Source of the DNA: Caecitellus pseudoparvulus
Lineage: Eukaryota; Protista; Bigyra: Bicosoecida
Assembly (NCBI GenBank): GCA_965644315.1
Contig: CBFFRQ010000020.1
Coordinates: 248,001 to 312,000 of the forward strand
Length of the DNA stretch: 64,000 nt
Direction of reading: 5' to 3'
In this document: piece after piece, positions 1 through 44,778 of the stretch
How the letters are laid out: the number at the start of each line of letters is the position of its first letter
Position numbering within the stretch: the first letter of the stretch is position 1
Made by a program: the position numbers and the translations under genes
Notes under the pieces: model-generated
Databases searched by the model: none
What the model saw: the letters and a program-made list of their open reading frames with translations, nothing else
What the model was told of the DNA's origin: nothing

Positions 1-2870
1 ACTGGAGCCACCACCAACACCTGCATCTGATGCTCCACCTGACACACCCACACTGCCTCCCACGATGCCCACCGCCCCTGCCCCTGTACCGCCATGGCCT
101 GCTTGCACTGACAAGCCACCACTAGTGCCGTTCACACCCCTCCCGCTCACGACGCGCACAGCCCCACTACCACCTGCACTGCTGCCGCTCCCCAGACTCG
201 CTGCACCGCTGGACCCTCCTGAGCTGGAACCGCTGCCCAGTGTGACGCCCCCACTGGCCCCACTGCCGCTGCTACTCACCGTCACATTGCCTGACGCTCC
301 ATGCTCAGACCCACCAGCTACTGCACTCACACTGCCACCAATCACACTGCCATCACCACCGACCAAGTGCAAGGCGCCACCACCCACCGCACCACTGCCG
401 ACCGCCACCTGCACCGCACCGGACTCACTGCCCTCCCCACTCGTCATCATCACACCCCCTGACGAGCCACCAGAGCCGCCACTCTGCACACCCACGGCGC
501 CCCCACTCGCCACACCCACACCATCTGCCCCGATCACCGTGACAGAGCCGCTGCTGCCCTCCAGAGCGCTGCCTGTGACCACCGCTAGAGCCCCCCCTGA
601 CCCACTCCCAGCAGCACCACTGCCAAACACCACGCTGCCACTTGCTTCACCGCCTCCACTTAGCACCGTCACACCACCGCTGCCCGCTGCAGTACTGGAC
701 CCACTCCTGGTGCTGACAAGCCCGCTCGTGCCGTTCACACTTGACCCGCTGGACACCTCAACTGCAGAGCTTGCATCATCGCCCCCACCTCCACGCACCA
801 CGGCTCCCCCACCCACATCACCCCCACCACCAGCCGCCAAAGCGTGACCACCGCCCTGACTCCCGGCACCCGCCTCGACAGTCAAAGACTCTGCTTGCAT
901 CTGCAAGGCACCGCCCGCGCCCTGGCTGGAGCCCACCATGAGCTTCGCGCCCCCCCCAGCAGACCCAAGCGACACGTCGCCCACTTGCCCACTTGCCAGC
1001 AGGACTGCCTCGCCAGCCACCAATGCCGACCCTGATGCCTGGACGCCGATGTCTCCGCTGCCTGCCACCCCTGTGCCGGTGTGCATGGCCAGTCCTCCGC
1101 TGCGCCCCGATGTGGCCACTCCGCTTGCCAACACAAGCGAGCTCCCACCTGCTTGGCTGCTGCCTGCCTGCGCTGCAACACGCCCACTCCTGCCCCCCGC
1201 CCCGCTGATGACAGCGACGCCGCCCCCCTTTGACATGCTCAATGCAAGGCTATCGCCCCCTTGCACCTCCACAGTGCCTGATGTAGTCTTGCCAGGGCCT
1301 GTGCCAATGCGCACCTGCCCACCCTGCCCGCTGGCCCCCGCTGAGCCAACTCCCACCTCCACGCGGCCACTTGAGCCACCAACTGAACCACCGTGCCCGC
1401 TCTCCAGTGTCAAGGCACCTGACCCTCTCGCGCCCTCGGCACTCGTCACTGATACCTCGCCTGTCGTCGCTTCCCGCCCTGACAAGGCTTCAGAGAACCT
1501 AAGCCCTTCACCTTGTAGCGCCAAGACCAACCGCCCCACCACATCGTCGTGCAGCATAGGACCACCCTCTCCACTGGACAGGATAGCACGCAAACTATCT
1601 TGTGCGCTGGCCTGACTGCCCCCTGATGCGATGCCTGATACGAGCGGCAGAGACAAAGCCGCGATGCGGCGCGCAGCCACATCGCTCACCGGCGCCCCTT
1701 GCTGTCCACGAGACAAGGCTTGGACGACAGCCCCCACCACCGTCGCCGGGGCATGCACTGAGCCACGCCCATCAACCGACAGCCTGCCATCTCCCCCTGC
1801 ACTGAGCACCATGCCTTGGCCACTGCCCACAGCCACTGCACCGCCGTCCAACACAGCACCACTGCCAGATACCCCGAGCGCTGTCGAGCCCACACTCAAC
1901 GACCCCCCACTAGACTCCAACACCGACACACCACCCTCCAGTCGCACAGACCCAGTGCCGTGCATGCTGATGTTTCCGCTTGCTTCAACAGCGACGTCAC
2001 CGCCGGACTCACCTCCCCCAGCCACACCAACCACGCTCCCACCACCAGCTACACGTGATGCCCCCGACTCAACCCCCACCACGCCACCGCCGCCAACCCG
2101 CACACCGCTTCCACCAGCCAACTGCAAGCCACCATCAGCATGTGTGCCTACGTCCACATTGCCTGCACCAACCACGCCTACTGACTGCCCAGCGAAAGAC
2201 ACCTCACCCCCAGCACCGCTGCCACTGGCCCCCCCGTGCACACGCACGGCACCACCCAAACCGCCCTCGGCGCGGCCCCCCCGCACGACTGCATCGCCTG
2301 CGTGCACTGCAGCTGCACCGCTCTCAATGGACACGCCCCCGCTGCCATGACTCCCACTGCCGCTCCCCACATCCACGCCACCGGCCCCCACGACGCTCAC
2401 CGCGCCACCCGCCACACTGATGCCGCCTGACTCAACACGCCCCGACCCACTCTCATGTGCAACATCACCACCTGCCCCTGCCTTGCTGCCTCCACCTGCC
2501 ACTTCGATCGCCGTGCCCCTCACATGCACACCTCTGCCGGACACTGCCACGCCGCCCGGTCCATGAACGGCAGTGCTGCCCCCCACAGCACCCCCACCAC
2601 CTGCCACACTCACCAGACCACCCACAGCAGTCCCCGACCCACCCAACAGCCCCACATCACCCGATGCCGTCGACACTGACACATCGCCCGCTGCACTCGT
2701 GCCGCCCCCTGACAGCACTGACACGCCACCCTGGCCCTGCACTTGCATCTCCGTCTGCACCTGCACTTGCACGCTGCCGCTTGCGTGGGAGTCCGCTGAA
2801 GCAAGCGTGGACACTGCCACTGAGCCGGCTGGGCCTGCTGTGGAGCTGCCACCAGCAACGTTGACACTTG
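1..2870. repeat. Fourth (partial) copy D of the 5.26-kb unit, equivalent to 5373-8242
   Basis: Near-identical to 5373-8242 at an offset of 5,372 bp. Confidence 0.95.
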
Positions 2871-5800
2871 TACCGAAAGCCGAGGCATTTTGACCAGCTA
2901 TCAGAACAGATCCCGTTGCTAGCACTCCCTCAGAGACTTTGACGAGCACATGTCCTGATCGATGAGTCCCGCTTGTTGATGAAGCTTGAAGTTTGTTTGA
3001 GGTTGTTTGTGACGCTCCCGTGGTAATGTTGACGTTACCTGTCAAGGCTCTGTGCCCAAACCCAGATGAAAGTTTCAAAGCCGCACCCTTTGTCACTGAC
3101 GGTCCTGTGTGAAAAATCATATCACCACTCACGCTGGTTGAGGCGCCTGTGCGCAAGTACAAGCCTCCCCCCCGAACTTGTGCCTGACCAGGACTGATGT
3201 ACACCCCCCCACTTGCACCGAATGAACTTCCTTGCAAATTTCCTGTTTGCAGAGAAACTTTTCCAGAGATTTGAGCACAGTTGCTCATGAGCGAAATCCC
3301 CGCGGAAGTTCCTCCCATCGCCGTAGCCGCTCCAGTGAGAACAGATACTGTGCCGGATTGGGCCGAAGAGGCTCTGCCTGATCCCACAATTGCAGACTGT
3401 GAGCTTGATTTGCTTGTACCCGACGCAAATTCAATACCTCCACTCCGAGATTCCGCATTCCCAGTCGCAGTGGAGACGAGTCCAGACGCTTGTGCCCCAC
3501 TTGCAGAGTGTATTCTGAGCTCGCTGCCAGTGGTGTTCGGGTTTGAACTTGACCCACTCGATATGTGATAGCTACCAGAAGCTGTCGTTTGGCTTCCTCC
3601 AGTCCCAAGTACTAGATTGCCCGGCACCATTGAAGCAGATCCCCCTTTCAAGTGAACATGGCCAGATGACAAAGCGTTCCCGGATCGAAGAACCACACTA
3701 GTTGACGCGATTTCATGTGCAGTTGAACTAATGGTGATTGGCTGACTGAGTGGAGGCAGTGCTTGTGTCACTTTGTCCGCGCCAACACGAACAATGCCCG
3801 GATACAACGGAGAGCTCCCAGCCCTGATTGAAACTCTAGAGGGTTGCTCTGGAACCCCGGAATCAGCGCCTCGAACAAAAATCGAACCTGGTCCGTCCCC
3901 ACTTGACTCCGACACAAGGTATATGTTTCCACCTTGAACTACACTATCAGAAGTTCGCAAAGAAACATTCCCCGACTCTCCATTGCTCTCACCCGCATAA
4001 ACAAAAACACCGCCAGTTTCAAACGCATCACCCGAACGAACATGCCCGTCTCCCGCGGAAACCAATGCCCCGCTCGTGCTCAGACCCACCTGCCCACTTG
4101 CAACTGCACTGTGATGGCCAGGATCGATATGCTGCGAGGAAACATGCACAACCGACCCTTCAACACTCAAACTGCCACCCACTCCCTCCGCTGACTCACC
4201 AGCACCAGCCACCACGCGCTCACCAGTGCCAGCCTCAAGCCCCACATCACCCCCCACCAAACCACTACCACCTGACACCTGCACAGCTGACCCCATACCA
4301 GCCAGCACGCTCACTGAGCCGCCCACAAGCCCATCGCCACCCTGCACACCGACAGCCCCTGCAACACCACCCCCACCTGCGCCCGACACCATGGCTACTG
4401 ACCCGGCCTGTCCTCCCACGCTTCTCCCCCCCGCCACCGACACAGCACCATGGCCTCGACCAACCCTCGTGCTCACATCACCAGCACCCAGCACTCCCCC
4501 GCCACTGCCAATCGCCACAGCGCCAGACCTGCCCACAGCGCTGTCCCCGCTGCGCACATCCAAGGCCCCTGACGCCACACCACCACCTGACATGCCGGTG
4601 CCCAATGCCACACTGTCCCCGCCCTCAATGCTGACTGACCCACTCTGTTCGCTCGAGCTTGAGCCGCTCACAGCCAACACAGTACCTCCACGCACAGCTC
4701 GGCCACCACCACCAAGGACTCTGACCTCCGACCCCGCAACAGCAATGCTGCCGCCCTCCACACCCCCGCCAGCGGACACAGTCACATGGCCGGCTGTCGC
4801 CCCTTCCCCGCTCACAATGCGGGACTCCCCCCCATCATCACTGCCATCGCCTCCACCGACCCTGACACCTGCCGCACCAGCCAACTCCACACCACCCCCT
4901 GACCCTGCCCACGCCCCGCCCCAACACCAACACTCGACCCAGACAACACAACTGACCCCGACGCCAGGCTGCTTTGCCCAGCACCCACCATGATCGACCC
5001 TGCCGTGCTGCTTCCCTCGCCCACCCGCATGGTCACATCCCCACTTGCACCTTGCCCGGCACCGCTCCCCAGCACAACACTGCCGGACAGCCCCCCATCA
5101 CTTGCACTGCCGCTCCGCACCTGCACACGGCCACCTCCCCCATGCACAGATGCCCCTGCATGTACACTCACGGCGCCCCCAGCACTCCCCACCACACCGG
5201 CATCGCCACCCGCCCACCTCACGCTGCCACCAACGCCCCTCGCCGCCACGCCTCCCCTCATCGCTAGCCTGCCACCAACTCCTCCATCGCTGACACCGCT
5301 GGACACTGTGACACCCCCCCTTCCCACGACACGCACGCTGCCGCCGCTCCCTGCAGCGCCACCAGCAACGACACTGGAGCCACCACCAACACCTGCATCT
5401 GATGCTCCACCTGACACACCCACACTGCCTCCCACGATGCCCACCGCCCCTGCCCCTGTACCGCCATGGCCTGCTTGCACTGACAAGCCACCACTAGTGC
5501 CGTTCACACCCCTCCCGCTCACGACGCGCACAGCCCCACTACCACCTGCACTGCTGCCGCTCCCCAGACTCGCTGCACCGCTGGACCCTCCTGAGCTGGA
5601 ACCGCTGCCCAGTGTGACGCCCCCACTGGCCCCACTGCCGCTGCTACTCACCGTCACATTGCCTGATGCTCCATGCTCAGACCCACCAGCTGCTGCACTC
5701 ACACTGCCACCAATCACACTGCCATCACCACCGACCAAGTGCAAGGCGCCACCACCCACCGCACCACTCCCGACCGCCACCTGCACCGCACCGGACTCAC

Positions 5801-8800
5801 TGCCCTCCCCACTCGTCATCATCACACCCCCTGACGAGCCACCAGAGCCGCCACTCTGCACACCCACGGCGCCCCCACTCGCCACACCCACACCACCTGC
5901 CCCGATCACCGTGACAGAGCCGCTGCTGCCCTCCAGAGCGCTGCCTGTGACCACCGCTAGAGCCCCCCCTGACCCACTCCCAGCAGCACCACTGCCAAAC
6001 ACCACGCTTCCACTTGCTTCACCGCCTCCACTTAGCACCGTCACACCACCGCTGCCCGCTGCAGTACTGGACCCACTCCTGGTGCTGACAAGCCCGCTCG
6101 TGCCGCTCACACTTGACCCGCTGGACACCTCAACTGCAGAGCTTGCATCATCGCCCCCACCTCCACGCACCACGGCTCCCCCACCCACATCACCCCCACC
6201 ACCAGCCGCCAAAGCGTGACCACCGCCCTGACTCCCGGCACCCGCCTCGACAGTCAAAGACTCTGCTTGCATCTGCAAGGCACCGCCCGCGCCCTGCCTG
6301 GAGCCCACCATGAGCTTCGCGCCCCCCCCAGCAGACCCGAGCGACACGTCGCCCACTTGCCCACTTGCCAGCAGGACTGCCTCGCCAGCCACCAATGCCG
6401 ACCCTGATGCCTGGACGCCGATGTCTCCGCTGCCTGCCACCCCTGTGCCGGTGTGCATGGCCAGTCCTCCGCTGCGCCCCGATGTGGCCACTCCGCTTGC
6501 CAACACAAGCGAGCTCCCACCTGCTTGGCTGCTGCCTGCCTGCGCTGCAACACGCCCACTCCTGCCCCCCGCCCCGCTGATGACAGCGACGCCGCCCCCC
6601 TCTGACATGCTCAATGCAAGGCTATCGCCCCCTTGCACCTCCACAGTGCCTGATGTAGTCGTGCCAGGGCCTGTGCCAATGCGCACCTGCCCACCCTGCC
6701 CGCTGGCCCCCGCTGAGCCAACTCCCACCTCCACGCGGCCACTTGAGCCACCAACTGAACCACCGTGCCCGCTCTCCAGTGTCAAGGCACCTGACCCTCT
6801 CGCGCCCTCGGCACTCGACACTGATACCTCGCCTGTCGTCGCTTCCCGCCCTGACAAGGCTTCAGAGAACCTGAGCCCTTCACCTTGTAGTGCCAAGACC
6901 AACCGCCCCACCACATCGTCGTGCAGCATAAGACCACCCTCTCCACTGGACAGGATAGCACGCAAACTATCTTGTGCGCTGGCCTGACTGCCCCCTGATG
7001 CGATGCCTGATACGAGCGGCAGAGACAAAGCCGCGATGCGGCGCGCAGCCACATTGCTCACCGGCGCCCCTTGCTGTCCACGAGACAAGGCTTGGACGAC
7101 AGCCCCCACCACCGTCGCCGGGGCATGCACTGAGCCACGCCCATCAACCGACAGCCTGCCCTCTCCCCCTGCACTGAGCACCATGCCTTGGCCACTGCCC
7201 ACAGCCACTGCACCGCCGTCCAACACAGCACCACTGCCAGATACCCCGAGCGCTGTCGAGCCCACACTCAACGACCCCCCACTAGACTCCAACACCGACA
7301 CACCACCCTCCAGTCGCACAGACCCAGTGCCGTGCATGCTGATGTTTCCGCTTGCTTCAACAGCGACGTCACCGCCGGACTCACCTCCCCCAGCCACACC
7401 AACCACGCTCCCACCACCAGCTACACGTGATGCCCCCGACTCAACCCCCACCACGCCACCGCCGCCAACCCGCACACCGCTTCCACCGGCCAACCGCAAG
7501 CCACCATCAGCATGTGTGCCTACGTCCACATTGCCTGCACCAACCACGCCTACTGACTGCCCAGCGAAAGACACCTCACCCCCAGCACCGCTGCCACTGG
7601 CCCCCCCGTGCACTCGCACGGCACCACCCAAACCGCCCTCGGCGCGGCCCCCCCGCACGGCTGCATCGCCTGCGTGCACTGCAGCTGCACCGCTCTCAAT
7701 GGACACGCCCCCGCTGCCATGACTCCCACTGCCGCTCCCCACATCCACGCCACCGGCCCCCACGACGCTCACCGCGCCACCCGCCACACTGATGCCGCCT
7801 GACTCAACACGCCCCGACCCACTCTCATGTGCAACATCACCACCTGCCCCTGCCTTGCTGCCTCCACCTGCCACTTCGATCGCCGTGCCCCTCACATGCA
7901 CACCTCTGCCGGACACTGCCACGCCGCCCGGTCCATGAACGGCAGTACTGCCCCCCACAGCACCCCCACCACCTGCCACACTCACCAGACCACCCACAGC
8001 AGTCCCCGACCCACCCAACAGCCCCACATCACCCGATGCCGTCGACACTGACACATCGCCCGCTGCACTCGTGCCGCCCCCTGACAGCACTGACACGCCA
8101 CCCTGGCCCTGCACTTGCATCTCCGTCTGCACCTGCACTTGCACGCTGCCGCTTGCGTGGGAGTCCGCTGAAGCAAGCGTGGACACTGCCACTGAGCCGG
8201 CTGGGCCTGCTGTGGAGCTGCCACCAGCAACGTTGACACTTGCACCCGACATCCCAACACCTTGCCCTGCCACAGACAGCGCGCCAGATGCCTCAGCAGC
8301 TTTCCCAGAAGAGACAACCAAGCCCCCCCCAGCATTGGCGCCAGCTGCTGTGCCCACATCGACCACACCACTGACTGAACCAGAACCGCCTTGCAAGGAT
8401 GCCACCCCATCACCATCAGCTGACATCACGATGCTCCCAGCGTCACCGGTACCGGAACCCACAAGCAGCGCTACCCCACCACCGCCTCCCTGCATCTGCA
8501 CGCTCCCATTCGTTGCCACAACGTTGTTTGCGCGGTCGCGGCTTGAGAGCCCGACGCGGCCTTCCGATGCAATGGCTACAGCCCCTCCTGCAGAGACACT
8601 GTGCCCTGCCTGGACCTGCACCCCTCTCATGTACTGCAGCAACATGCCACCCGACGTTCCCTTGCTTGCGCCGCTGTGCATGTGCACTGTACCTGACGAC
8701 AGCCTGCCACCCCCTGTTGTCACCGCCACGCCTCTAGCAGATGCGACGCTGACGTCACCACTGGACAAGGAGCCAAGGGATGTCGCCACACTCAGTCGCG

Positions 8801-11800
8801 CCGAAGCGCCGGAAGTCTGCAGGTGCACGGCACCACCCCTTGCTCCTGAGCCACTTGATAGAGCAATGGTAGATGCGCCAAAGTGTCCTGACCCAGCAGT
8901 CACTTGCACTGAACCACCCTGCACCTGACCACGAGCACCAGCAAAGTGAATACTACCTGTGCCCCCGTCGGCCGGACTAGATGCAAGGCTCACGCCGCCG
9001 GTGTCGAAAGCAGAGCTCGATGACAGGCTGATCAGCCCACTCTGCATCACCGCTCGACCAGATCGCAGCAATGCTGTGCCTCCATAGCGTCCAGCGCCAG
9101 CATGCCCTGAAAACATGCCACTTGCAGATGCTTGCGTTCCAGCCGCGCGAAACTGTACAGACCCACCGTGCGCACCCTCTGCTGCATACACCAGGGCACT
9201 ACCGGGGACGCCCACGCCCCCCGTGCTCCCACCTTTAATGACAACTCTACCAGATCCATCTGCCTCTGAAGATCCAGATGCAACAGAAATCAGTCCAGAA
9301 GCAAGTGCAGTCCCTGTCACAAAATCTACACGCCCACTGCCGGTCGCACTGCCACCCCTTGTCAACACCGCAAGTGCAGAACAAGCACCGATACCTGCGG
9401 ACACTGAGCAGCCGGGCGCACGAACAATTGAAGACCCACCCACTCCCTCCGCTGACTCACCAGCACCAGCCACCACGCGCTCACCAGTGCCAGCCTCAAG
9501 CCCCACATCACCCCCCACCAAACCACTACCACCCGACACCTGCACAGTTGACCCCATACCAGCAAGCACGCTCACTGAGCCGCCCACAAGCCCATCGCCA
9601 CCCTGCACACCGACAGCCCCTGCAACACCACCCCCACCTGCGCCCGACACCATGGCTACTGACCCGGCCTGTCCTCCCACGCTTCTCCCCCCCGCCACCG
9701 ACACAGCACCATGGCCTCGACCAACCCTCGTGCTCACATCACCAGCACCCAGCACTCCCCCGCCACTGCCAATCGCCACAGCGCCAGACCTGCCCACAGC
9801 GCTGTCCCCGCTGCGCACATCCAAGGCCCCTGACGCCACACCACCACCTGACATGCCGGTGCCCAATGCCACACTGTCCCCGCCCTCAATGCTGACTGAC
9901 CCACTCTGTTCGCTCGAGCTTGAGCCGCTCACAGCCAACACAGTACCTCCACGCACAGCTCGGCCACCACCACCAAGGACTCTGACCTCCGACCCCGCAA
10001 CAGCAATGCTGCCGCCCTCCACACCCCCGCCAGCGGACACAGTCACATGGCCGGCTGTCGCCCCTTCCCCGCTCACAATGCGGGACTCCCCCCCATCATC
10101 ACTGCCATCGCCTCCACCGACCCTGACACCTGCCGCACCAGCCAACTCCACACCACCCCCTGACCCTGCCCACGCCCCGCCCCAACACCAACACTCGACC
10201 CAGACAACACAACTGACCCCGACGCCAGGCTGCTTTGCCCAGCACCCACCATGATCGACCCTGCCGTGCTGCTTCCCTCGCCCACCCGCATGGTCACATC
10301 CCCACTTGCACCTTGCCCGGCACCGCTCCCCAGCACAACACTGCCGGACAGCCCCCCATCACTTGCACTGCCGCTCCGCACCTGCACACGGCCACCTCCC
10401 CCATGCACAGATGCCCCTGCATGTACACTCACGGCGCCCCCAGCACTCCCCACCACACCGGCATCGCCACCCGCCCACCTCACGCTGCCACCAACGCCCC
10501 TCGCCGCCACGCCTCCCCTCATCGCTAGCCTGCCACCAACTCCTCCATCGCTGACACCGCTGGACACTGTGACACCCCCCCTTCCCACGACACGCACGCT
10601 GCCGCCGCTCCCTGCAGCGCCACCAGCAACGACACTGGAGCCACCACCAACACCTGCATCTGATGCTCCACCTGACACACCCACACTGCCTCCCACGATG
10701 CCCACCGCCCCTGCCCCTGTACCGCCATGGCCTGCTTGCACTGACAAGCCACCACTAGTGCCGTTCACACCCCTCCCGCTCACGACGCGCACAGCCCCAC
10801 TACCACCTGCACTGCTGCCGCTCCCCAGACTCGCTGCACCGCTGGACCCTCCTGAGCTGGAACCGCTGCCCAGTGTGACGCCCCCACTGGCCCCACTGCC
10901 GCTGCTACTCACCGTCACATTGCCTGATGCTCCATGCTCAGACCCACCAGCTGCTGCACTCACACTGCCACCAATCACACTGCCATCACCACCGACCAAG
11001 TGCAAGGCGCCACCACCCACCGCACCACTCCCGACCGCCACCTGCACCGCACCGGACTCACTGCCCTCCCCACTCGTCATCATCACACCCCCTGACGAGC
11101 CACCAGAGCCGCCACTCTGCACACCCACGGCGCCCCCACTCGCCACACCCACACCACCTGCCCCGATCACCGTGACAGAGCCGCTGCTGCCCTCCAGAGC
11201 GCTGCCTGTGACCACCGCTAGAGCCCCCCCTGACCCACTCCCAGCAGCACCACTGCCAAACACCACGCTTCCACTTGCTTCACCGCCTCCACTTAGCACC
11301 GTCACACCACCGCTGCCCGCTGCAGTACTGGACCCACTCCTGGTGCTGACAAGCCCGCTCGTGCCGCTCACACTTGACCCGCTGGACACCTCAACTGCAG
11401 AGCTTGCATCATCGCCCCCACCTCCACGCACCACGGCTCCCCCACCCACATCACCCCCACCACCAGCCGCCAAAGCGTGACCACCGCCCTGACTCCCGGC
11501 ACCCGCCTCGACAGTCAAAGACTCTGCTTGCATCTGCAAGGCACCGCCCGCGCCCTGCCTGGAGCCCACCATGAGCTTCGCGCCCCCCCCAGCAGACCCG
11601 AGCGACACGTCGCCCACTTGCCCACTTGCCAGCAGGACTGCCTCGCCAGCCACCAATGCCGACCCTGATGCCTGGACGCCGATGTCTCCGCTGCCTGCCA
11701 CCCCTGTGCCGGTGTGCATGGCCAGTCCTCCGCTGCGCCCCGATGTGGCCACTCCGCTTGCCAACACAAGCGAGCTCCCACCTGCTTGGCTGCTGCCTGC

Positions 11801-14800: not shown

Positions 14801-17800
14801 TGCACAGCTGACCCCATACCAGCCAGCACGCTCACTGAGCCGCCCACAAGCCCATCGCCACCCTGCACACCGACAGCCCCTGCAACACCACCCCCACCTG
14901 CGCCCGACACCATGGCTACTGACCCGGCCTGTCCTCCCACGCTTCTCCCCCCCGCCACCGACACAGCACCATGGCCTCGACCAACCCTCGTGCTCACATC
15001 ACCAGCACCCAGCACTCCCCCGCCACTGCCAATCGCCACAGCGCCAGACCTGCCCACAGCGCTGTCCCCGCTGCGCACATCCAAGGCCCCTGACGCCACA
15101 CCACCACCTGACATGCCGGTGCCCAATGCCACACTGTCCCCGCCCTCAATGCTGACTGACCCACTCTGTTCGCTCGAGCTTGAGCCGCTCACAGCCAACA
15201 CAGTACCTCCACGCACAGCTCGGCCACCACCACCAAGGACTCTGACCTCCGACCCCGCAACAGCAATGCTGCCGCCCTCCACACCCCCGCCAGCGGACAC
15301 AGTCACATGGCCGGCTGTCGCCCCTTCCCCGCTCACAATGCGGGACTCCCCCCCATCATCACTGCCATCGCCTCCACCGACCCTGACACCTGCCGCACCA
15401 GCCAACTCCACACCACCCCCCTGACCCTGCCCACGCCCCGCCCCAACACCAACACTCGACCCAGACAACACAACTGACCCCGACGCCAGGCTGCTTTGCC
15501 CAGCACCCACCATGATCGACCCTGCCGTGCTGCTTCCCTCGCCCACCCGCATGGTCACATCCCCACTTGCACCTTGCCCGGCACCGCTCCCCAGCACAAC
15601 ACTGCCGGACAGCCCCCCATCACTTGCACTGCCGCTCCGCACCTGCACACGGCCACCTCCCCCATGCACAGACGCCCCTGCATGTACACTCACGGCGCCC
15701 CCAGCACTCCCCACCACACCGGCATCGCCACCCGCCCACCTCACGCTGCCACCAACGCCCCTCGCCGCCACGCCTCCCCTCATCGCTAGCCTGCCACCAA
15801 CTCCTCCATCGCTGACACCGCTGGACACTGTGACACCCCCCCTTCCCACGACACGCACGTTGCCGCCGCTCCCTGCAGCGCCACCAGCAACGACACTGGA
15901 GCCACCACCAACACCTGCATCTGATGCTCCACCTGACACACCCACACTGCCTCCCACGATGCCCACCGCCCCTGCCCCTGTACCGCCATGGCCTGCTTGC
16001 ACTGACAAGCCACCACTAGTGCCGTTCACACCCCTCCCGCTCACGACGCGCACAGCCCCACTACCACCTGCACTGCTGCCGCTCCCCAGACTCGCTGCAC
16101 CGCTGGACCCTCCTGAGCTGGAACCGCTGCCCAGTGTGACGCCCCCACTGGCCCCACTGCCGCTGCTACTCACCGTCACATTGCCTGATGCTCCATGCTC
16201 AGACCCACCAGCTGCTGCACTCACACTGCCACCAATCACACTGCCATCACCACCGACCAAGTGCAAGGCGCCACCACCCACCGCACCACTCCCGACCGCC
16301 ACCTGCACCGCACCGGACTCACTGCCCTCCCCACTCGTCATCATCACACCCCCTGACGAGCCACCAGAGCCGCCACTCTGCACACCCACGGCGCCCCCAC
16401 TCGCCACACCCACACCACCTGCCCCGATCACCGTGACAGAGCCGCTGCTGCCCTCCAGAGCGCTGCCTGTGACCACCGCTAGAGCCCCCCCTGACCCACT
16501 CCCAGCAGCACCACTGCCAAACACCACGCTTCCACTTGCTTCACCGCCTCCACTTAGCACCGTCACACCACCGCTGCCCGCTGCAGTACTGGACCCACTC
16601 CTGGTGCTGACAAGCCCGCTCGTGCCGTTCACACTTGACCCGCTGGACACCTCAACTGCAGAGCTTGCATCATCGCCTCCACCTCCACGCACCACGGCTC
16701 CCCCACCCACATCACCCCCACCACCAGCCGCCAAAGCGTGACCACCGCCCTGACTCCCGGCACCCGCCTCGACAGTCAAAGACTCTGCTTGCATCTGCAA
16801 GGCACCGCCCGCGCCCTGGCTGGAGCCCACCATGAGCTTCGCGCCCCCCCCAGCAGACCCAAGCGACACGTCGCCCACTTGCCCACTTGCCAGCAGGACT
16901 GCCTCGCCAGCCACCAATGCCGACCCTGATGCCTGGACGCCGATGTCTCCGCTGCCTGCCACCCCTGTGCCGGTGTGCATGGCCAGTCCTCCGCTGCGCC
17001 CCGATGTGGCCACTCCGCTTGCCAACACAAGCGAGCTCCCACCTGCTTGGCTGCTGCCTGCCTGCGCTGCAACACGCCCACTCCTGCCCCCCGCCCCGCT
17101 GATGACAGCGACGCCGCCCCCTCTGACATGCTCAATGCAAGGCTATCGCCCCCTTGCACCTCCACAGTGCCTGATGTAGTCTTGCCAGGGCCTGTGCCAA
17201 TGCGCACCTGCCCACCCTGCCCGCTGGCCCCCGCTGAGCCAACTCCCACCTCCACGCGGCCACTTGAGCCACCAACTGAACCACCGTGCCCGCTCTCCAG
17301 TGTCAAGGCACCTGACCCTCTCGCGCCCTCGGCACTCGTCACTGATACCTCGCCTGTCGTCGCTTCCCGCCCTGACAAGGCTTCAGAGAACCTAAGCCCT
17401 TCACCTTGTAGCGCCAAGACCAACCGCCCCACCACATCGTCGTGCAGCATAGGACCACCCTCTCCACTGGACAGGATAGCACGCAAACTATCTTGTGCGC
17501 TGGCCTGACTGCCCCCTGATGCGATGCCTGATACGAGCGGCAGAGACAAAGCCGCGATGCGGCGCGCAGCCACATCGCTCACCGGCGCCCCTTGCTGTCC
17601 ACGAGACAAGGCTTGGACGACAGCCCCCACCACCGTCGCCGGGGCATGCACCGAGCCACGCCCATCAACCGACAGCCTGCCATCTCCCCCTGCACTGAGC
17701 ACCATGCCTTGGCCACTGCCCACAGCCACTGCACCGCCGTCCAACACAGCACCACTGCCAGATACCCCGAGCGCTGTCGAGCCCACACTCAACGACCCCC

Positions 17801-20800
17801 CACTAGACTCCAACACCGACACACCACCCTCCAGTCGCACAGACCCAGTGCCGTGCATGCTGATGTTTCCGCTTGCTTCGACAGCGACGTCACCGCCGGA
17901 CTCACCTCCCCCAGCCACGCCAACCACGCTCCCACCACCAGCTACACGTGATGCCCCCGACTCAACCCCCACCACGCCACCGCCGCCAACCCGCACACCG
18001 CTTCCACCAGCCAACCGCAAGCCACCATCAGCATGTGTGCCTACGTCCACATTGCCTGCACCAACCACACCTACTGACTGCCCAGCGAAAGACACCTCAC
18101 CCCCAGCACCGCTGCCACTGGCCCCCCCGTGCACTCGCACGGCACCACCCAAACCGCCCTCGGCGCGGCCCCCCCGCACGGCTGCATCGCCTGCGTGCAC
18201 TGCAGCTGCACCGCTCTCAATGGACACGCCCCCGCTGCCATGACTCCCACTGCCGCTCCCCACATCCACGCCACCAGCCCCCACGACGCTCACCGCGCCA
18301 CCCGCCACACTGATGCCGCCTGACTCAACACGCCCCGACCCACTCTCATGTGCAACATCACCACCTGCCCCTGCCTTGCTGCCTCCACCTGCCACTTCGA
18401 TCGCCGTGCCCCTCACATGCACACCTCTGCCGGACACTGCCACGCCGCCCGGTCCATGAACGGCAGTGCTGCCCCCCACAGCACCCCCACCACCTGCCAC
18501 ACTCACCAGACCACCCACAGCAGTCCCCGACCCACCCAACAGCCCCACATCACCCGATGCCGTCGACACTGACACATCGCCCGCTGCACTCGTGCCGCCC
18601 CCTGACAGCACTGACACGCCACCCTGGCCCTGCACTTGCATCTCCGTCTGCACCTGCACTTGCACGCTGCCGCTTGCGTGGGAGTCCGCTGAAGCAAGCG
18701 TGGACACTGTCACTGAGCCGGCTGGGCCTGCTGTGGAGCTGCCACCAGCAACGTTGACACTTGCACCCGACATCCCAACACCTTGCCCTGCCACAGACAG
18801 CGCGCCAGATGCTTCAGCAGCTTTCCCAGAAGAGACAACCAAGCCCCCCCCAGCATTGGCGCCAGCTGCTGTGCCCACATCGACCACACCACTGACTGAA
18901 CCAGAACCGCCTTCCAAGGATGCCACCCCATCGCCATCAGCTGACATCACGATGCTCCCAGCGTCACCGGTACCGGAACCCACAAGCAGCGCTACCCCAC
19001 CACCGCCTCCCTGCATCTGCACGCTCCCATTCGTTGCCACAACGTTGTTTGCGCGGTCGCGGCTTGAGAGCCCGACGCAGCCTTCCGATGCAATGGCTAC
19101 AGCCCCTCCTGCAGAGACACTGTGCCCTGCCTGGACCTGCACCCCTCTCATGTACTGCAGCAACATGCCACCCGACGTTCCCTTGCTTGCGCCGCTGTGC
19201 ATGTGCACTGTACCTGACGACAGCCTGCCACCCCCTGTTGTCACCGCCACGCCTCCAGCAGATGCGACGTTGACGTCACCACTGGACAGGGCGCCGAGCC
19301 CTGATGCTACTCTGCTTGCACCCTGATCGACCGTCTGGATTGCGACAGATCCTCCTGGTCTGGATGATACTGAAGTTCCTGCATGAACAAGTATCGATCC
19401 TCTCTCTTCAATGGACCGAGTTGATCCCGCTTGAAGGTCGATAGACGCGGTGTTGAGCGAGACATCGCCACTTCTGCGTGCCCCGCTACTGGATCTTAGT
19501 GACACTACGCCGGAGCTGATGGAGGCGGCACCAGAACGCATGTCAATCGTAGATTCCGAAAGTAAGTGGAAGCCTGCGCCCTCAGTCCCAGCTCCTCCTT
19601 GTAGATCAACTGCTCCGGATGATGCCACACCGCCACCGCTGGAAACTTGCACCTTTCCTGACCTTTTGCTCGTTCCTGAACCTGCAAGAAGTGCCCCAGA
19701 GTGCAGCTTGGATGCTCCGCTCTGTAGGAATACTGATCCTGATGCTTGAAAAGCAGACCCTGTCGAGGCATTCGTGTTGCCCCCAGCCGCAATGGTAATG
19801 CTCCCGGTCACGACATTGGGCTTTGTCACAACAGAAACGAGTGAAGATGCCACCATGGTGACAGTCGACGATGCTTGCACACGAACAGTGTCCGCAGTAG
19901 CACGCAACACTGCGTTTCTAGCTGAAGCCGCTCCCACGACAAGGTCTGCAGCACCTCGTGCACCTGCCGACTCACTTCGCAGTTGGACTGGGCCTTGGCC
20001 ACGAAGCAGCATCCGAGATGAAGCACCTTTGCCTCCGGACAAAGAAGTACCACGAACTAGCTGCCCTTGAACGCGAGTATGCTGTGAGTGAAGCCCGTCC
20101 TGATCTGGTCGTCCGACCACTACCCACGCCCCCGGCGCCCCCGTTGACCCAACAGCCCCAGCAGTCGAAGGGGACACTTGCACGCTGTCAGGTGCATGGA
20201 GGAAAATGCCACCCGACTTGGACAGCCCGCTCCCAGTCAGTACGCTGACGTTTGAAGCAGTCGCGGACAAGTTTAGGCCGTGACCGTGCAGATCTCTAGA
20301 GTTCGTTCGAACCATCACAGTCCCGAACCCCACCTGAAGTGTGGGTGATTCCACAAGTCCTCGCTCAAATGAGGCCTGAACATCCTGCCCAGATACTCGC
20401 ATTGCTGCCCCGGCAAATGCTCGCAGAGAACCTCCACCCACTGGCCCTGACGAGCCGCGAACATGCACAGATCCTCCCCTGCCGGTCAATGCCGTTCCAG
20501 CACGTATGAAGGTTGAGGCCTCTGTCTCTTTCGTACCTTGGGAGGACAACAACAGCGTGCCTGCGGATTCAAGTGAACCAGCTCGAAACATGACATCGCC
20601 AGGTGCAGCTCCATTGCCTGCAGCAGCCACGATCCCCGAAGCGGACAGCTGTATGCCTCCAGAAGATGCGCCCGAAAGTGTCGTCACTCGAACCGGCCCT
20701 GAACTCTCACTGAATGCCTTGGACTGAAGCAAAACATCCCCTCCAGATAAATCCAGGGCCGCGTTACGCCCCGCCTTGGCAGATGCGGTGATGCTTCCTG

Positions 20801-26800: not shown

Positions 26801-28932
26801 CGGTGAGGATGCTCCCCCCCCTGCCCCCAGCTCCAGCACGCACATGCACTGCAGCTGCTATTGGCGCCGCCCCAGAGGCTACAGTGACACTGCCAGGCGA
26901 TGCTGCTGCGCCGGACTGCACCCTGACGCCTCCCGCGCGAACAGCTGGCGCCGACAGCAGACTGAGGTTGCCGCTCTGGGGGGCAGACCCCGTGACAAAG
27001 CGAAGGTGCCCAGAGCCTGAAGTCGCGCCGTTGCCCGAGGCCAGAGAGATGTCGCCAGCCCTGCCGGAGGCTGCTGGACCAATGGTGTCCCCACCAACAA
27101 TCTGCACGGACCCGCCGGTGCTGCTCCGCCCAGCCACGAGGGTCACGTTGCCTGCTGTGGGGCCGCTTCCCGCTCGCGCCGTCACTGCTCCTTGAGCGCC
27201 CGCCCGGAGCAAGACACCGCCGGCTGCCACGCCGGCCCCAGTCGAAACGCGCACACTGCCTGTGGAAGGCGCGCTCCCTGATGAAAGAGAAGCGGAGCCG
27301 GATGCAGCCGAGGAGCGGGCGGTGCGCACTGCAACACTGCCGGATGAGCCCCCTCCCACTCCCGACGCGAGGGTGGCACGCCCTCCACCCTGACGGGCGG
27401 CACCTGAGTGCAGGCGAAGAGGCGCCGACGCCCCCCCTGACTCACCAGCTCGAACCAGCACTCTGGAGCCTTGACCATGTGGGGAGAGCCCGGCTACCAG
27501 GGTGACAGGGCCGCCTCTGCCGCCGCCCCCGCGCCCGCCTTGCACGAGCAGGTCGCCCGAGGAGGCATTGGCGCGGGCTCCTGCGCCAGGCACTAATGAA
27601 ACAGCACCCTCCGTTGCAGTGACCAGCACGCTTCCACCGGTCGCCGCTGTGCTGTTTCCAGCGACCACGTGGACGTCGCCGCCCACGTGCCGCCCAGCGC
27701 CAGCCTGGAGCTGTGCGTGTCCCGCCGGCGCCTGGTGCTGGCGGGAGAGCAAGTTGGCGGGGGAGGAACCCGCGAGGAGGCTGACTGAGCCTCCATGGTG
27801 GGCGTGCCCAGTGCCGGCGCCGCCCTCCAGCACAATGTCTGCGCTGGCATTGGCCCCCTGGCCCGTGGAGGTCAGGGCCACGCTGGGGCCGGTCACGAGG
27901 AAGCCAGACGCGTTCAGCTGCAAGCTGAACGCGTCAGTGGGGCTGCCCGCAAACAACGCTCCGCCCCCAAGCAATGGGTCTGCGACGATTTCGAGGTCCC
28001 CTAGCACTCGGCTCACTGTGCAGAGCACCGATGGAAGCGGGAGGTGGCGGTGGCAGGAGGCGCGTGCGGGGCACGCCGCAGGTACGCACGGGCGAGCTTT
28101 CTGTCCTGAGGAGGGCATTCGCTTGGTTCAAGTAGCAGTCCATGGTCAATGGACTCCTCCCCTCGGCTTGTGGGACAAGAGGGTTGGCCCCAAGTGCCTT
28201 GCTTGGCTGCGTGGGCCTGGGCGACACACGTAGAGGTCGAGTGACACCAGCCGCACCCGTAGGGGTGCCGCGTGCACGCCTCGCACGTGGCCGCAGCTGC
28301 ACACACATCTGTGCAAGTGGAGGAGTCCAGAGGGTGCAAGGGTGCGCTGCGCCTGTCACCTGTTTACAGGAGGAACGCGCCCGCTGGCTGGGTGCGGAAA
28401 TCGCTCCCTGCACGCCAGCAGACACAACGCCACGGTGCAGGGCAGGAGGGGCCAGCACAGCCCTCACACTGGCCGGAGGCCATGCTCCTTGCTAGGGTGC
28501 GAGTGTGCACGCAGTGAGGACGCACCGGAATCAGCGGGGCACACGGCACCGCCTTCAAAGTACCACTCCGCGCAGGCAGGCGGGGAGGGCGAGCCAGGGA
28601 GAGCCGGCGCAGCCGGTCCGGAAGCAGTTCCAGGCAGGCAGCGCAGAGAGTCTTGGCAGAAGCCGCAGGCGCCCGTTGCAACGCAAGAGGAGCACGTCGT
28701 TCTGTGGCGTGAGCGTGGGTTTTGGTGTGCGGGCGCGCGTGCTGGGGCGTGCGGAGGCGCCGTGCAGGTTCTCAGTGCGGAACTTGCGCAGGAGGTGGCA
28801 GGAGGCACCGCGCACTCAAACGCCGCCCCCGGGCGCGAGGACTCACTCTTGGCTGCAGTGGGCGCGCGCAAGGCTAACGAGGGCCAGCAAGGCGGCTGCC
28901 CTGGTGGCTGAGAGGAAGCCTGGCGGCCGCAT
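1..28932 (-). CDS. Giant secreted/surface protein: signal peptide + 2 PSI-type Cys domains + very long Gly/Ser/Ala/Val-rich repeat region (probable beta-solenoid); 3' end lies beyond the window; 4 single-base frameshifts as assembled
   Basis: ATG at 28932 gives MRPPGFLSATRAAALLALVSLARAHCSQE. Exons 28932-28847, 28701-28526, 28308-28090 and 28015-<1 are joined by phase-compatible GT-AG introns. The ORF-track pieces (3780, 1837, 564 and 1779 aa) join once C5 runs at 17117, 11856, 10156 and 4895 are read as C6. I translated 4174-2871 by hand and found no stop; 2870-1 matches an open part of the repeat. Confidence 0.85.
4175..19291. repeat. Tandem repeat, unit ~5,262 bp (1,754 codons): copy A 19291-14031, copy B 14030-8770, copy C 8769-4175 (truncated)
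   Basis: Near-identical sequence at a 5,261-bp offset (e.g. antisense ORFs at 4990/10251/15512). Identity ends at 19291/14030 on the right and 4175/9436 on the left. Confidence 0.97.
28016..28846 (-). other. Three spliceosomal introns of the giant gene (28846-28702, 28525-28309, 28089-28016)
   Basis: Donors GTGAGT, GTGCGT, GTGCGT and CAG acceptors; all three restore one continuous frame. Confidence 0.75.
28110..28858 (-). other. Two PSI (plexin-semaphorin-integrin)-type cysteine-rich domains at the N-terminus of the giant protein
   Basis: After splicing: CSQETTCSSCVATGACGFCQDSLRCLPG...CAEWYF and CAAAATCEACTRHPYGCGWCHSTSTCV, matching the PSI pattern C-x5-C-x2-C-x5/6-C-G-[WF]-C-x5-C. Confidence 0.75.
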
Positions 28933-29428
28933 GTCAACGTAGAAGCGCGCACAAGCGTGCGTGGCAGCGAGCCGAAACGCGCTGCTCAAAACGCAGGAGC
29001 TGCGCCCTGCCTGCGAGGGCAGGCAAGGGGCGGTCCTGACAATGGGTAATGCAGCAAGGTGGGCCTTGCATGCAAAGGGTGAGTTCATGAGGCATGAACT
29101 GCAAAATGGCCGGCGCGGGGAATGGTGCCCTGCAGGCAGGCCTGACGTGTGTGCTGCAGTGGCGTGGTGCGGAAATTGAGGCGGCACACTCTGAGCACCC
29201 TCCAGCGCACCGGGCGGCAGAGCAGCCTGCAGGGCAAATTCTGGCCTGTCTGAAGCTCGCTGCATGATGCATGCCTGCCGTCACTGCACCTCAGCGCCGG
29301 CCACAAACCGTGAACCAGGCCTAGCCCACCGGGCGAGCTAGCTAGGCCACTTCGAGGCGAGGCTCGCAGCGCCGCGCCCCCGGCGCCACCGACTCCTTGC
29401 CGTGGCAGTGCGCGCATGTCAGTGCACC
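28933..29428. promoter_or_regulatory. Probable bidirectional promoter between the giant gene and ZMYND12-like
   Basis: ~500-bp gap between two divergent start codons; inferred from position only. Confidence 0.4.
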
Positions 29429-30574: not shown

Positions 30575-30586
30575 CCCCCCCGCCCC

Positions 30587-31702: not shown

Positions 31703-31793
31703 GGCGTGATGGGGCGGGGGGGTGCGATGGTACAGGGGGTGTCCCTGTGCGTTTTGGAGTGTGTTGTGGGCGCTGCATTGGGGTGAGGGGGGG

Positions 31794-38319: not shown

Positions 38320-38491
38320 ACGGGTGGGGGGCGCTCAAATTCCGCACACCAACCCCACGCTGCCCACGCAACGCGCAGCCCCGCCGCCACGCACAACCGC
38401 AGGCACAGCGCGCTCAGCTCCGGGTGCCGGCGTGGGTCACTGGCATTCACGTGTGTGACTTCGAATTGCCCCCCGCCCCGCGCTGCCGGCC

Positions 38492-39547: not shown

Positions 39548-39654
39548 ACCCCCCCCCCTCCACGGTCCTGCAGCGCGGGGGTGGTTGGTGGCGGGGTCAG
39601 GCGGGGTCACTGCATTTGGCCCGGGGCGGCGGCGGCCACGGCGAAGGGGGGGGG

Positions 39655-44745: not shown

Positions 44746-44778
<33 letters not shown>

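What the first reader, a model, noticed from the sequence alone, without database searches (positions are those of the whole stretch)
1..28932. Giant (>=9,500 aa) secreted protein: PSI head on a very long Gly/Ser beta-solenoid-like body
Seen: a signal peptide and two PSI domains, hidden in three small exons the ORF track misses, are spliced to a >28 kb exon built from hundreds of imperfect [SG]G-x-[VI]-x-[VIL]-x-[SAT]G units, with several N-x-[ST] sequons near the start. No stop is reached inside the window once frameshifts are corrected. Known: alternating hydrophobic strands with Gly/Ser turns typify beta-helix/solenoid adhesins, and PSI domains occur in eukaryotic surface proteins. Inference: a long rod or fibre acting as an adhesin or as a structural element (stalk, lorica, scale, extrusome or defensive coat).
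Basis: partly seen in the sequence, partly recalled or inferred. Interest (0 to 1): 0.8.

Follow-up and report, generated by a model that had tools for sequence, protein, structure and literature searches.

The report
Giant self-cleaving fibre protein gene
The window holds the first third of a roughly 30,000-codon gene of a marine flagellate for a secreted fibre protein that carries phage-type self-cleaving folding domains, so it is probably the precursor of micron-long three-chain surface fibres, a kind of protein known so far only from one recent preprint on other protists.

Summary
On the minus strand, three small GT-AG exons encode a signal peptide and two 8-cysteine PSI domains. They join in phase to an exon that fills window 1-28015.

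It runs about 63 kb further left, to a stop at contig position 185336-8, giving about 91.6 kb and about 30,400 codons.

Six frame breaks all lie in near-identical repeats. The four inside the window are G5 versus G6 runs whose sister copies are in frame, so they are probably consensus errors.

The body is made of 14-15-residue Ser/Gly-rich units (S-G-x-V-x-L-x-S-G...). It has no Pfam or PDB sequence match.

Just left of the window, the same frame holds two intact Peptidase_S74/ICA domains with the Ser-Lys dyad and a fold like the MYRF ICA domain. Four degenerate ICA remnants sit at the same slot of the 5.26-kb repeat inside the window.

Relatives with the same PSI-body-ICA layout exist in oomycetes and in an unrelated 48%-GC eukaryote. 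The same genome has at least one more such giant gene, which this scan had already noted.

My best reading is a precursor of a trimeric, ICA-chaperoned, probably glycosylated beta-helical fibril. Its closest relative in kind is the alveolate TLP-12 glycofibril. The fold of the body and its expression remain untested.

The parts
28847..28932 (-). Exon 1: ATG, signal-peptide-like leader, first Cys of PSI-1; ends in phase 2 before GTGAGT
   Evidence: Read directly from the sequence
28702..28846 (-). Intron 1 (145 nt, GTGAGT...CAG)
   Evidence: the frame is kept across the junction
28526..28701 (-). Exon 2: PSI-1 (C-x6-C-x2-C-x5-C-x2-C-x5-C-x21-C-x10-C, counting the Cys of exon 1)
   Evidence: Pfam PSI E 0.033, below the cut-off; Cys pattern read directly
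28309..28525 (-). Intron 2 (217 nt, GTGCGT...CAG)
28090..28308 (-). Exon 3: PSI-2 (CGWC motif, 8 Cys) plus linker
   Evidence: Pfam PF01437, 29.3 bits, E 1.1e-6, above the cut-off
28016..28089 (-). Intron 3 (74 nt, GTGCGT...CAG)
1..28015 (-). In-window part of the giant exon 4. It continues about 62.7 kb left of the window to the stop at contig C20:185336-8.
19292..28015 (-). Unique N-terminal fibre body. It starts SRVLGDLEIVADPLLGGG and is built of 14-15-aa S/G-rich units.
   Evidence: Orthologous start in L026, BLASTP E 1e-15. Purifying selection.
4175..19291 (-). Near-identical tandem higher-order repeat, period 5261/5260 nt (about 1,754 codons). A further copy at period 5372 covers window 1-8242.
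   Evidence: Exact 40-mer offsets; search of the window's own genome
2871..4174 (-). In-frame unique cassette that replaces part of one repeat copy
17117..17121 (-). Frame break 1: C5 run (G5 on the coding strand). In-frame sister copies have 6.
11856..11860 (-). Frame break 2: the same site in the next repeat copy, C5
10156..10160 (-). Frame break 3: second slippery site, C5
4895..4899 (-). Frame break 4: second slippery site in the next copy, C5
17376..17633 (-). Degenerate ICA-like remnant (86 aa, no Ser-Lys dyad), copy 1
   Evidence: hhalign against the ICA family profile: probability 87% over the last helix. Weak colinear BLASTP, E 0.038. Same slot in the repeat as the intact ICA domains.
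12115..12372 (-). Degenerate ICA-like remnant, copy 2
6855..7112 (-). Degenerate ICA-like remnant, copy 3
1483..1740 (-). Degenerate ICA-like remnant, copy 4. The next two slots, about 3.6 and 8.9 kb left of the window, hold intact Peptidase_S74 domains.

Best explanation
Window 1-28932 is the 5' third of one minus-strand gene of about 91.6 kb (about 30,400 codons).

Domain order:
- signal peptide;
- two PSI domains;
- about 10,600 residues of 14-15-residue Ser/Gly/Ala/Val/Thr-rich beta-strand units;
- an ICA (Peptidase_S74) domain, 1,650 more residues, and a second ICA domain;
- about 17,800 more residues, which include roughly 90 copies of a 153-residue (10 x 15) repeat;
- a Cys-rich end domain of about 230 residues and a Pro/Ser/Thr tail.

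Proposed mechanism (inferred). The protein enters the secretory pathway. Three chains are brought into register by the ICA domains, which template the folding of the upstream repeats into an intertwined trimeric beta-helix. The ICA domains then cut the chain at the Ser of S-D-R-R-I-K through a Ser-Lys dyad. This would give pieces of about 10,690, 1,757 and 17,940 residues, which are probably heavily glycosylated. The products would be thin extracellular fibrils a few hundred nanometres to over a micron long.

The cellular role is the least certain step. Candidates are a surface or flagellar hair, a coat, or an adhesive or prey-capture fibril.

What is shown: the gene structure, the PSI and ICA domains, the repeat periodicity, the conservation, and the paralogues. 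What is inferred: trimerisation, cleavage, glycosylation and location.
For: Gene model:
- The exon junctions are in phase with canonical splice sites.
- PSI-2 passes Pfam's cut-off.

Extent of the gene:
- Open frames of 3,783, 1,875, 602, 1,848, 11,619, 6,613 and 4,499 codons abut on one strand, from contig position 276127 to 185339.
- GC drops and no frame continues after the stop.

Frame breaks:
- The four in-window breaks are G5 versus G6 runs. Seven of the 11 instances of these sites are in frame.
- An unplaced contig of the repeat unit (C156) is open over 1,791 codons.

ICA domains:
- Two Peptidase_S74 domains lie in the 11,619-codon frame (E 1.7e-25). Both carry S-x4-K.
- The closest solved sequence is the MYRF ICA domain (E 2e-6).
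- The AlphaFold model built with a 136-sequence alignment gives pLDDT 95-98 over the ICA domain.
- Foldseek's best match is MYRF ICA 7dc3 (TM 0.73, rmsd 1.9 A, E 2e-8). Next come the phage GA-1, T5 and K1F ICA domains.

Body:
- Period 13-15 residues; the motif is 50-100 times enriched over shuffles.

Conservation:
- Purifying selection and no indels in another strain.
- 179 relatives at E <= 1e-3. The named ones are oomycetes.
- A 48%-GC eukaryote contig has PSI-PSI, the same body start, S/G body, three ICA domains and more S/G body, all contiguous.
- Phytophthora infestans has S/G frames spanning more than 14 kb around PITG_01491.
- Paralogues lie on C214 and C85.

Precedent for the mechanism:
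- The TLP-12 glycofibril is a trimeric triple beta-helix of roughly 20,000-residue alveolate proteins made of short S/G repeats with an ICA domain (bioRxiv 10.1101/2025.09.30.679562).
Against: - No RNA data exist, so neither the splicing nor expression is shown.
- The body fold is not shown. Monomer AlphaFold gave pLDDT 45-70 with little regular structure for the 255 residues after the ICA domain, and 33 without an alignment.
- About 17,900 residues lie downstream of the last ICA domain. The classical C-to-N templating model does not cover them.
- Six frame breaks exist in the assembly. If they are real, the gene is broken.
- Copy numbers of the 5.26-kb and 459-bp arrays rest on one assembly.
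- No anchor or localisation signal was found beyond the signal peptide.
Confidence: 0.6

Rival explanations
1. One reading: one chain folds alone into a very long beta-solenoid rod that acts as an adhesin or structural element. The ICA domains play no part in folding the body.
For: The pattern of alternating hydrophobic residues with Gly/Ser turns and the 14-15-residue period fit narrow single-chain beta-helices or beta-rolls too. Most of the body lies far from any intact ICA domain.
Against: - Intact, conserved ICA domains with the catalytic dyad recur in every relative examined.
- In all solved cases these domains serve trimeric fibres.
- Monomer AlphaFold did not give a confident solenoid.
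- No known beta-helix repeat family matched.
Confidence: 0.15
2. The body is a largely unstructured, mucin-like Ser/Gly/Thr-rich glycoprotein thread. The ICA domains only trimerise and cut it. The regular period reflects glycosylation spacing, not beta-structure.
For: The composition is G 22%, S 19%, A 13%, T 9%. The AlphaFold confidence for the body is low. Some fibrils in the CryoSeek preprint have linear, non-beta peptide cores held together by glycans.
Against: The conserved V-x-L / V-x-V pairs in each unit and 12% Val are typical of buried beta-strands, not of mucins. The ICA-bearing precedent, TLP-12, is a beta-helix.
Confidence: 0.12
3. The locus is a decaying pseudogene or partly an assembly artefact. 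On this reading the frameshifts are real, or the arrays are mis-assembled, and no 30,000-residue protein is made.
For: There are six frame breaks. The arrays are near-identical over 5.26-kb and 459-bp periods, which long reads may not span. A leftover contig, C156, carries the same unit. No RNA evidence exists.
Against: - All breaks lie in repeats, where polishing fails. Four are one-base homopolymer differences whose sister copies are in frame.
- Open frames of 11,619 and 6,613 codons are not expected in a decaying gene.
- The unique part is under purifying selection and free of indels in four data sets.
- Neighbouring genes are intact.
Confidence: 0.08
4. The G5/G6 runs are a real slippage switch (phase variation or programmed frameshifting) that sets how much of the fibre is made.
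For: All four in-window breaks fall at just two equivalent sites of the repeat.
Against: Runs of 5-6 G are the commonest site of long-read consensus errors. The other two breaks are not at these sites: one is two 1-nt insertions and the other a messy indel. I know of no precedent in protist nuclear genes.
Confidence: 0.03

Closest known systems
TLP-12 glycofibril proteins of alveolates (e.g. Amoebophrya A0A8J1ZHD7, 19,853 aa; CryoSeek preprint, bioRxiv 10.1101/2025.09.30.679562)
   Same: Both are giant protist proteins of 20-30 thousand residues. Both are made almost wholly of short Gly/Ser-rich repeats and carry an ICA domain. TLP-12 forms an extracellular fibril whose solved core is a three-chain triple beta-helix with a thick O-glycan shell. 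Its function is unknown.
   Different: - The unit here is 14-15 residues (S-G-x-V-x-L-x-S-G...), not the GSxxSx7 dodecapeptide.
- The ICA domains here are internal and periodic (two intact, four degenerate), not a single C-terminal one.
- This protein has a PSI-PSI head and a Cys-rich tail domain.
- The lineage is stramenopile, not alveolate.
MYRF (myelin regulatory factor) ICA domain
   Same: It is the closest solved ICA domain by sequence (E 2e-6) and by fold (TM 0.73, rmsd 1.9 A). In both proteins the ICA domain is internal, with the Ser-Lys dyad at i and i+5. In MYRF, cleavage frees an N-terminal trimer.
   Different: [quoted passage not shown] It has no secreted repeat fibre.
Phage tail fibres and tailspikes with a C-terminal intramolecular chaperone (K1F endosialidase, T5 pb1, GA-1 neck appendage)
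   Same: In these proteins the ICA domain trimerises, templates an upstream triple beta-helix and then cuts itself off. They are thin trimeric fibres.
   Different: Phage proteins are about 1,000 residues long with one terminal ICA domain that is discarded. Here the chain is about 30 times longer, eukaryotic, secreted through the ER and spliced. After cleavage, each ICA domain would stay on the N-terminus of the next piece.
Trimeric autotransporter adhesin heads (YadA-type 14-residue beta-roll repeats)
   Same: The repeat length is similar, and so is the style: a short hydrophobic strand flanked by small residues. Both are trimeric fibres used for adhesion.
   Different: No Hep_Hag, YadA-anchor or other autotransporter family matched. 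Those proteins are bacterial outer-membrane proteins without ICA domains. The resemblance is recalled from memory and is not a tested relationship.

Membership tests
Peptidase_S74 / ICA-domain proteins | Match to Pfam PF13884 above the gathering score | tested here: met
   Two domains lie in the same 11,619-codon frame, 3.6 and 8.9 kb left of the window. Scores are 89.5 bits (E 1.7e-25) and 52.2 bits each in the six-frame search.
Peptidase_S74 / ICA-domain proteins | Catalytic Ser-Lys dyad (S-x4-K, as S-D-x-R-x-K) | tested here: met
   Both copies read FSF-S-D-R-R-I-K. The family consensus is SDxRIK. The four in-window remnants lack the dyad.
Peptidase_S74 / ICA-domain proteins | ICA fold | tested here: met
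   AlphaFold pLDDT 95-98 over the domain. Foldseek matches 7dc3 with TM 0.73, rmsd 1.9 A and E 2e-8, followed by 3gud, 4uw8 and 3gw6.
Peptidase_S74 / ICA-domain proteins | Trimerisation and autocleavage | not testable with these tools
   This needs a multimer prediction or biochemistry.
PSI (plexin-semaphorin-integrin) domain | Pfam PF01437 above the cut-off and the 8-Cys pattern | tested here: met
   PSI-2 (exon 3): 29.3 bits against a cut-off of 23.1, with 8 Cys and the CGWC motif.
PSI (plexin-semaphorin-integrin) domain | Second PSI domain (exons 1-2) | tested here: inconclusive
   Exon 2 searched alone gives 15 bits, E 0.033. The 8-Cys spacing is complete only if the Cys of exon 1 is counted. 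The joined sequence was not searched, by rule. The orthologue has two such Cys modules encoded contiguously.
TLP-12-type glycofibril proteins | GSxxSx7 dodecapeptide repeat | tested here: not met
   The period is 13-15 residues, with consensus S-G-s-V-x-L-x-S-G-a-[GS]-x-x-[SG]-[SG].
TLP-12-type glycofibril proteins | Giant protist protein of short S/G repeats with an ICA domain | tested here: met
   The ICA domains are internal here, not C-terminal.
TLP-12-type glycofibril proteins | Trimeric triple beta-helix core with a dense O-glycan shell | not testable with these tools
   The monomer AlphaFold result for the body was of low confidence. No multimer tool or glycan data were available.
   Body pLDDT was 45-70 with an alignment and 33 without. 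There were no Pfam hits over about 14,000 residues and no PDB sequence hits. A weak model does not exclude the fold.

The most novel reading that the evidence does not exclude
Stramenopiles (bicosoecids and oomycetes), and at least one other eukaryote lineage, may share an undescribed class of micron-long extracellular fibres. Each would be made from polyproteins of 5,000 to 30,000 residues in which phage-type ICA domains recur at fixed intervals. The ICA domains would act as serial folding nuclei and cutting sites, so that the spacing of intact versus degenerate ICA slots sets the length of each fibre segment. Such fibres could be the still unidentified fine hairs or terminal filaments of flagella, or the adhesive and prey-capture threads of these cells.
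Probability: 0.2. Interest if true: 0.85.

Novelty: new variant of a known kind. Interest (0 to 1): 0.7.

Why it matters
If the frame breaks are errors, this is one of the longest protein-coding genes on record, at about 30,400 codons and in the range of titin.

It also extends a phage and MYRF folding device, the self-cleaving ICA chaperone, to the serial assembly of huge secreted fibres in free-living flagellates and in oomycete pathogens.

It gives a sequence and a genetic handle to a class of environmental glycofibrils that cryo-EM has only just begun to see, and whose producers and functions are unknown.

It also shows that current annotations chop these genes into anonymous fragments. 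An example is Phytophthora infestans PITG_01491, which is annotated together with a neighbouring 2,616-residue gene.

Tried and rejected
- Word-indexed protein searches gave nothing useful. The N-terminal 1,460 residues and a 393-residue ICA tile returned no hits, and the ICA alignment returned only 11 unnamed hits. The exhaustive HMMER search was needed.
- Single-sequence AlphaFold of the ICA tile failed (pLDDT 33).
- ESM Atlas look-ups were uninformative for the body start (unnamed clusters; nearest named one DUF2345 at 0.77) and for the C-terminal domain (no hit).
- Pfam found nothing in the C-terminal 887 residues or in the ICA-like remnant.
- PDB sequence searches with two body tiles found nothing.
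- No RNA run holds the stretch, so the single read-laying run could only show DNA colinearity.
- I considered a link to the Phytophthora large peripheral vesicle glycoprotein (Lpv, over 400 kDa; PMC3869178). It remains an untested lead.
- Literature searches for PITG_01490, PITG_01491 and the assembly accessions found nothing.
- The organism was not identified by my own tests. Earlier notes call it a bicosoecid-like relative of Cafeteria. Its size (30.6 Mb, 215 contigs) does not match the four published Cafeteria assemblies.
- The spliced (joined) protein was never built or searched. Exons were searched apart.

Full report
**What is in the window**

The window is G000:C20:248001-312000. On the minus strand the ORF list shows frames of 3,780, 1,837, 564 and 1,779 codons that abut between 28118 and 4812. 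All are rich in Gly, Ser, Ala, Val and Thr.

Upstream of the first frame, the three minus-strand reading frames of 28100-28960 show a start codon at 28932. It is followed by MRPPGFLSATRAAALLALVSLARA|HC, which has a basic n-region, an 11-residue hydrophobic core and A-x-A. Two Cys-rich modules follow in two other frames.

Canonical introns connect the pieces:
- GTGAGT...CAG at 28846-28702
- GTGCGT...CAG at 28525-28309
- GTGCGT...CAG at 28089-28016

The codon phase is kept at each junction.

Each exon was searched on its own. Exon 3 is a PSI domain above Pfam's cut-off (29.3 bits, E 1e-6). Exon 2 is below it (E 0.033), but together with the Cys of exon 1 it has the complete 8-Cys spacing. I did not build or search the joined protein.

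**The gene is far longer than the window**

I fetched the contig leftwards. The same strand carries further open frames of 11,619, 6,613 and 4,499 codons, down to a stop at contig position 185336-8. After that stop GC falls to about 55% and no frame continues.

From the ATG (contig 276932) this is about 91.6 kb. With 436 nt of introns removed, that is about 30,400 codons.

The far end has these parts:
- roughly 90 copies of a 459-bp (153-residue) repeat, with 366-bp variants;
- about 1,000 unique S/G-rich residues;
- a domain of about 230 residues with 8 Cys;
- a Pro/Ser/Thr-rich tail.

There is no hydrophobic anchor. The C-terminal domain has no Pfam or Atlas match and no paralogue in the genome.

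**The frame breaks**

Six breaks separate the frames.

The four in the window are single-base differences at two sites of the 5.26-kb repeat. The coding strand has G5 at window 17117-21, 11856-60, 10156-60 and 4895-99. It has G6 in the seven other instances, all of which are in frame. These include both sites on the unplaced 5.4-kb contig C156, which is open over 1,791 codons.

The other two breaks lie in the 459-bp array. One is two 1-nt insertions. The other is a small messy indel.

Other long frames in the window are unbroken. I therefore read the breaks as consensus errors in repeats that short reads cannot polish. This is an inference.

**Is it coding, and is it real DNA?**

Four DNA data sets from different studies hold window 23600-29500 colinearly, introns included, with no indel inside the gene. 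Two of them span at least the 5′ 3.6 kb of it in one contig, and a third is broken into short contigs. One of the four comes from a strain that differs at 65 sites.

Of the 40 differences listed for that strain, 21 are synonymous and 23 fall at third codon positions. The replacements are mostly conservative. That is the signature of a translated frame under moderate purifying selection.

No RNA run holds the stretch, so neither expression nor splicing is shown.

**The body**

The hydrophobic pattern repeats every 13-15 residues, and exactly every 15 in the 153-residue array.

Anchored units give the consensus S-G-s-V-x-L-x-S-G-a-[GS]-x-x-[SG]-[SG]. The composition is G 22, S 19, A 13, V 12, T 9, L 6 per cent.

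Nothing in Pfam matches about 14,000 residues of the body. Nothing in the PDB matches two body tiles by sequence.

**The ICA domains change the reading**

I confirmed them.

- The 11,619-codon frame holds two Peptidase_S74 domains (E 1.7e-25).
- Both begin ...PQVFSF-S-D-R-R-I-K. This is the Ser-Lys dyad, with the spacing that I recall (not checked here) from MYRF and from phage endosialidase.
- The closest solved sequence is the MYRF ICA domain (E 2e-6), followed by a phage long tail fibre.
- With a 136-sequence alignment, AlphaFold models the domain at pLDDT 95-98.
- Foldseek ranks MYRF ICA first (TM 0.73, rmsd 1.9 A, E 2e-8). The ICA domains of phages GA-1, T5 and K1F follow.

The two Ser codons are 5,271 nt apart, which is the period of the in-window repeat. 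At the equivalent slot of each in-window copy sits an 86-residue non-repetitive insert (1483-1740, 6855-7112, 12115-12372, 17376-17633). It aligns to the last helix of the ICA profile (hhalign probability 87%; colinear BLASTP E 0.038). It lacks the dyad.

So the gene has six periodic ICA slots: four degenerate ones in the window and two intact ones just beyond it.

**Relatives**

An exhaustive HMMER search used a 1,063-residue tile around the first ICA domain. It found 179 proteins at E <= 1e-3 and 85 at E <= 1e-10. Most are short fragments that carry the ICA domain, and many of them also carry S/G-rich units.

The named ones are oomycetes: Aphanomyces astaci and A. euteiches, Achlya hypogyna, Phytophthora infestans PITG_01491 and Nothophytophthora. 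There is also a EukProt entry and two short contigs labelled as archaeal MAGs.

In P. infestans, S/G-rich frames span more than 14 kb around PITG_01491, up to a gap. They are annotated as a 2,616-residue gene and a 392-residue gene.

A 48%-GC eukaryote contig (GCA_024449685.1, locus L026) has the following in one line, without introns between them:
- two PSI-like Cys modules;
- the sequence NRVVGNLLVEADPLWGGG, which aligns from residue 1 of our exon 4 (BLASTP E 1e-15);
- 1,500 residues of S/G units;
- three ICA domains about 370 residues apart;
- more S/G units.

This is independent support that the PSI head and the body belong to one protein.

Within the same genome, contig C214 holds at least two more ICA domains in open frames of 9,046 and 14,013 codons, with a similar body. 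I judge the ICA domains about 60% identical by eye; no alignment was computed. Contig C85 holds a 45%-identical copy of the body start.

This scan had already noted the C214 gene (s1-661137, s1-661112). The same kind of gene has therefore been found before, on other DNA of this genome.

**How it most likely works**

In the solved phage cases and in MYRF, the ICA domain forms a trimer, nucleates the upstream triple beta-helix and then cuts the chain at its own first Ser (PMC3742443 and PMC8326128, listed).

A 2025 preprint solved an environmental glycofibril, TLP-12. Its core is a three-chain triple beta-helix of Gly/Ser-rich dodecapeptides under a thick O-glycan shell. The authors traced it to alveolate proteins of about 20,000 residues with a C-terminal ICA domain.

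By analogy, I propose that this protein is a secreted precursor. Its chains trimerise at the ICA domains and fold into an intertwined beta-helical fibril. They are then cut into pieces of about 10,690, 1,757 and 17,940 residues.

Each 14-15-residue unit would add one to three 4.8 A strands. The pieces would then measure roughly 0.35-1, 0.06-0.17 and 0.6-1.8 micrometres.

These steps are inferred. Monomer AlphaFold left the 255 body residues after the ICA domain at pLDDT 45-70. That neither supports nor excludes an obligate trimer.

What folds the 17,900 residues downstream of the last ICA domain is not explained. The Cys-rich end domain is a candidate.

The cellular role is open. The protein is secreted, has no anchor, has N-glycan sequons near the head and is very rich in Ser/Thr. 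These features fit a surface or flagellar hair, a coat, or an adhesive or capture thread. I give no more than about 0.3 to any one of these.

**Comparison with what is known, and novelty**

It works like a phage tail fibre or TLP-12. It carries genuine ICA and PSI domains.

It fails the defining repeat of TLP-12, having 14-15 residues per unit against 12, and it differs in three further ways:
- the ICA domains are internal and periodic;
- it has a PSI head;
- it belongs to a different lineage.

I file it as a new variant of a known kind. I found no paper on the oomycete or bicosoecid members.

**Limits**

- The organism was not identified by my own tests. Earlier notes call it a bicosoecid-like relative of Cafeteria.
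- Array copy numbers rest on one assembly.

Noticed in passing
G000:C156:1-5373 (locus L009): An unplaced 5.4-kb contig is a 99-100% identical copy of the 5.37-kb repeat unit. It has C6 at both slippery sites and one open 1,791-codon frame. It is probably a leftover of the unresolved array, so the true copy number may differ from the assembly.
   Followed up: partly
G000:C214:42497-51560 (L022, L023) and G000:C85:9003-9254: A second giant gene carries at least two intact ICA domains (about 60% identical to those of this gene) in open frames of 9,046 and 14,013 codons. A 45%-identical copy of the body start lies on C85 in a 3,194-codon frame. The genome therefore has a small family of these genes.
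   Followed up: partly
window 29436-29457: A CTG/CAG trinucleotide run lies just upstream of the gene (poly-Gln on the minus strand). It differs in length between data sets: one run has an extra CTGCTGCTG at 29438, and several contigs end there.
   Followed up: no
L026:5176-5178 (GCA_024449685.1 contig JAANST010975565.1): The orthologue's second PSI module is interrupted by a single in-frame TAA (C-A-W-C-S-*-Q-S-T-C). The gene caller therefore starts the gene after the PSI head. It may be a sequencing error or a real break. Frame changes also split the body into three called genes.
   Followed up: no
P0054 and P0015: Two short contigs deposited as archaeal MAGs (Methanosarcinales; 'archaeon') encode 'tail fiber domain-containing proteins'. 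They have the same ICA type and S/G units as the eukaryotic family. They may be mis-binned eukaryotic fragments.
   Followed up: no
window 1-28000 versus 30000-46000: The giant gene has 58-68% GC and a strong strand skew (GC skew down to -0.48 on the plus strand). Its neighbours reach 75-80% GC. The Gly/Ser/Val codon usage of the repeats would explain the skew.
   Followed up: no
L027 (P. infestans DS028119.1:1906220-1927568): The annotated genes of 2,616 and 392 residues (PITG_01491) look like pieces of one S/G-rich gene of more than 14 kb. It has a PSI-like '...DAPCP' end upstream and runs into an assembly gap.
   Followed up: partly
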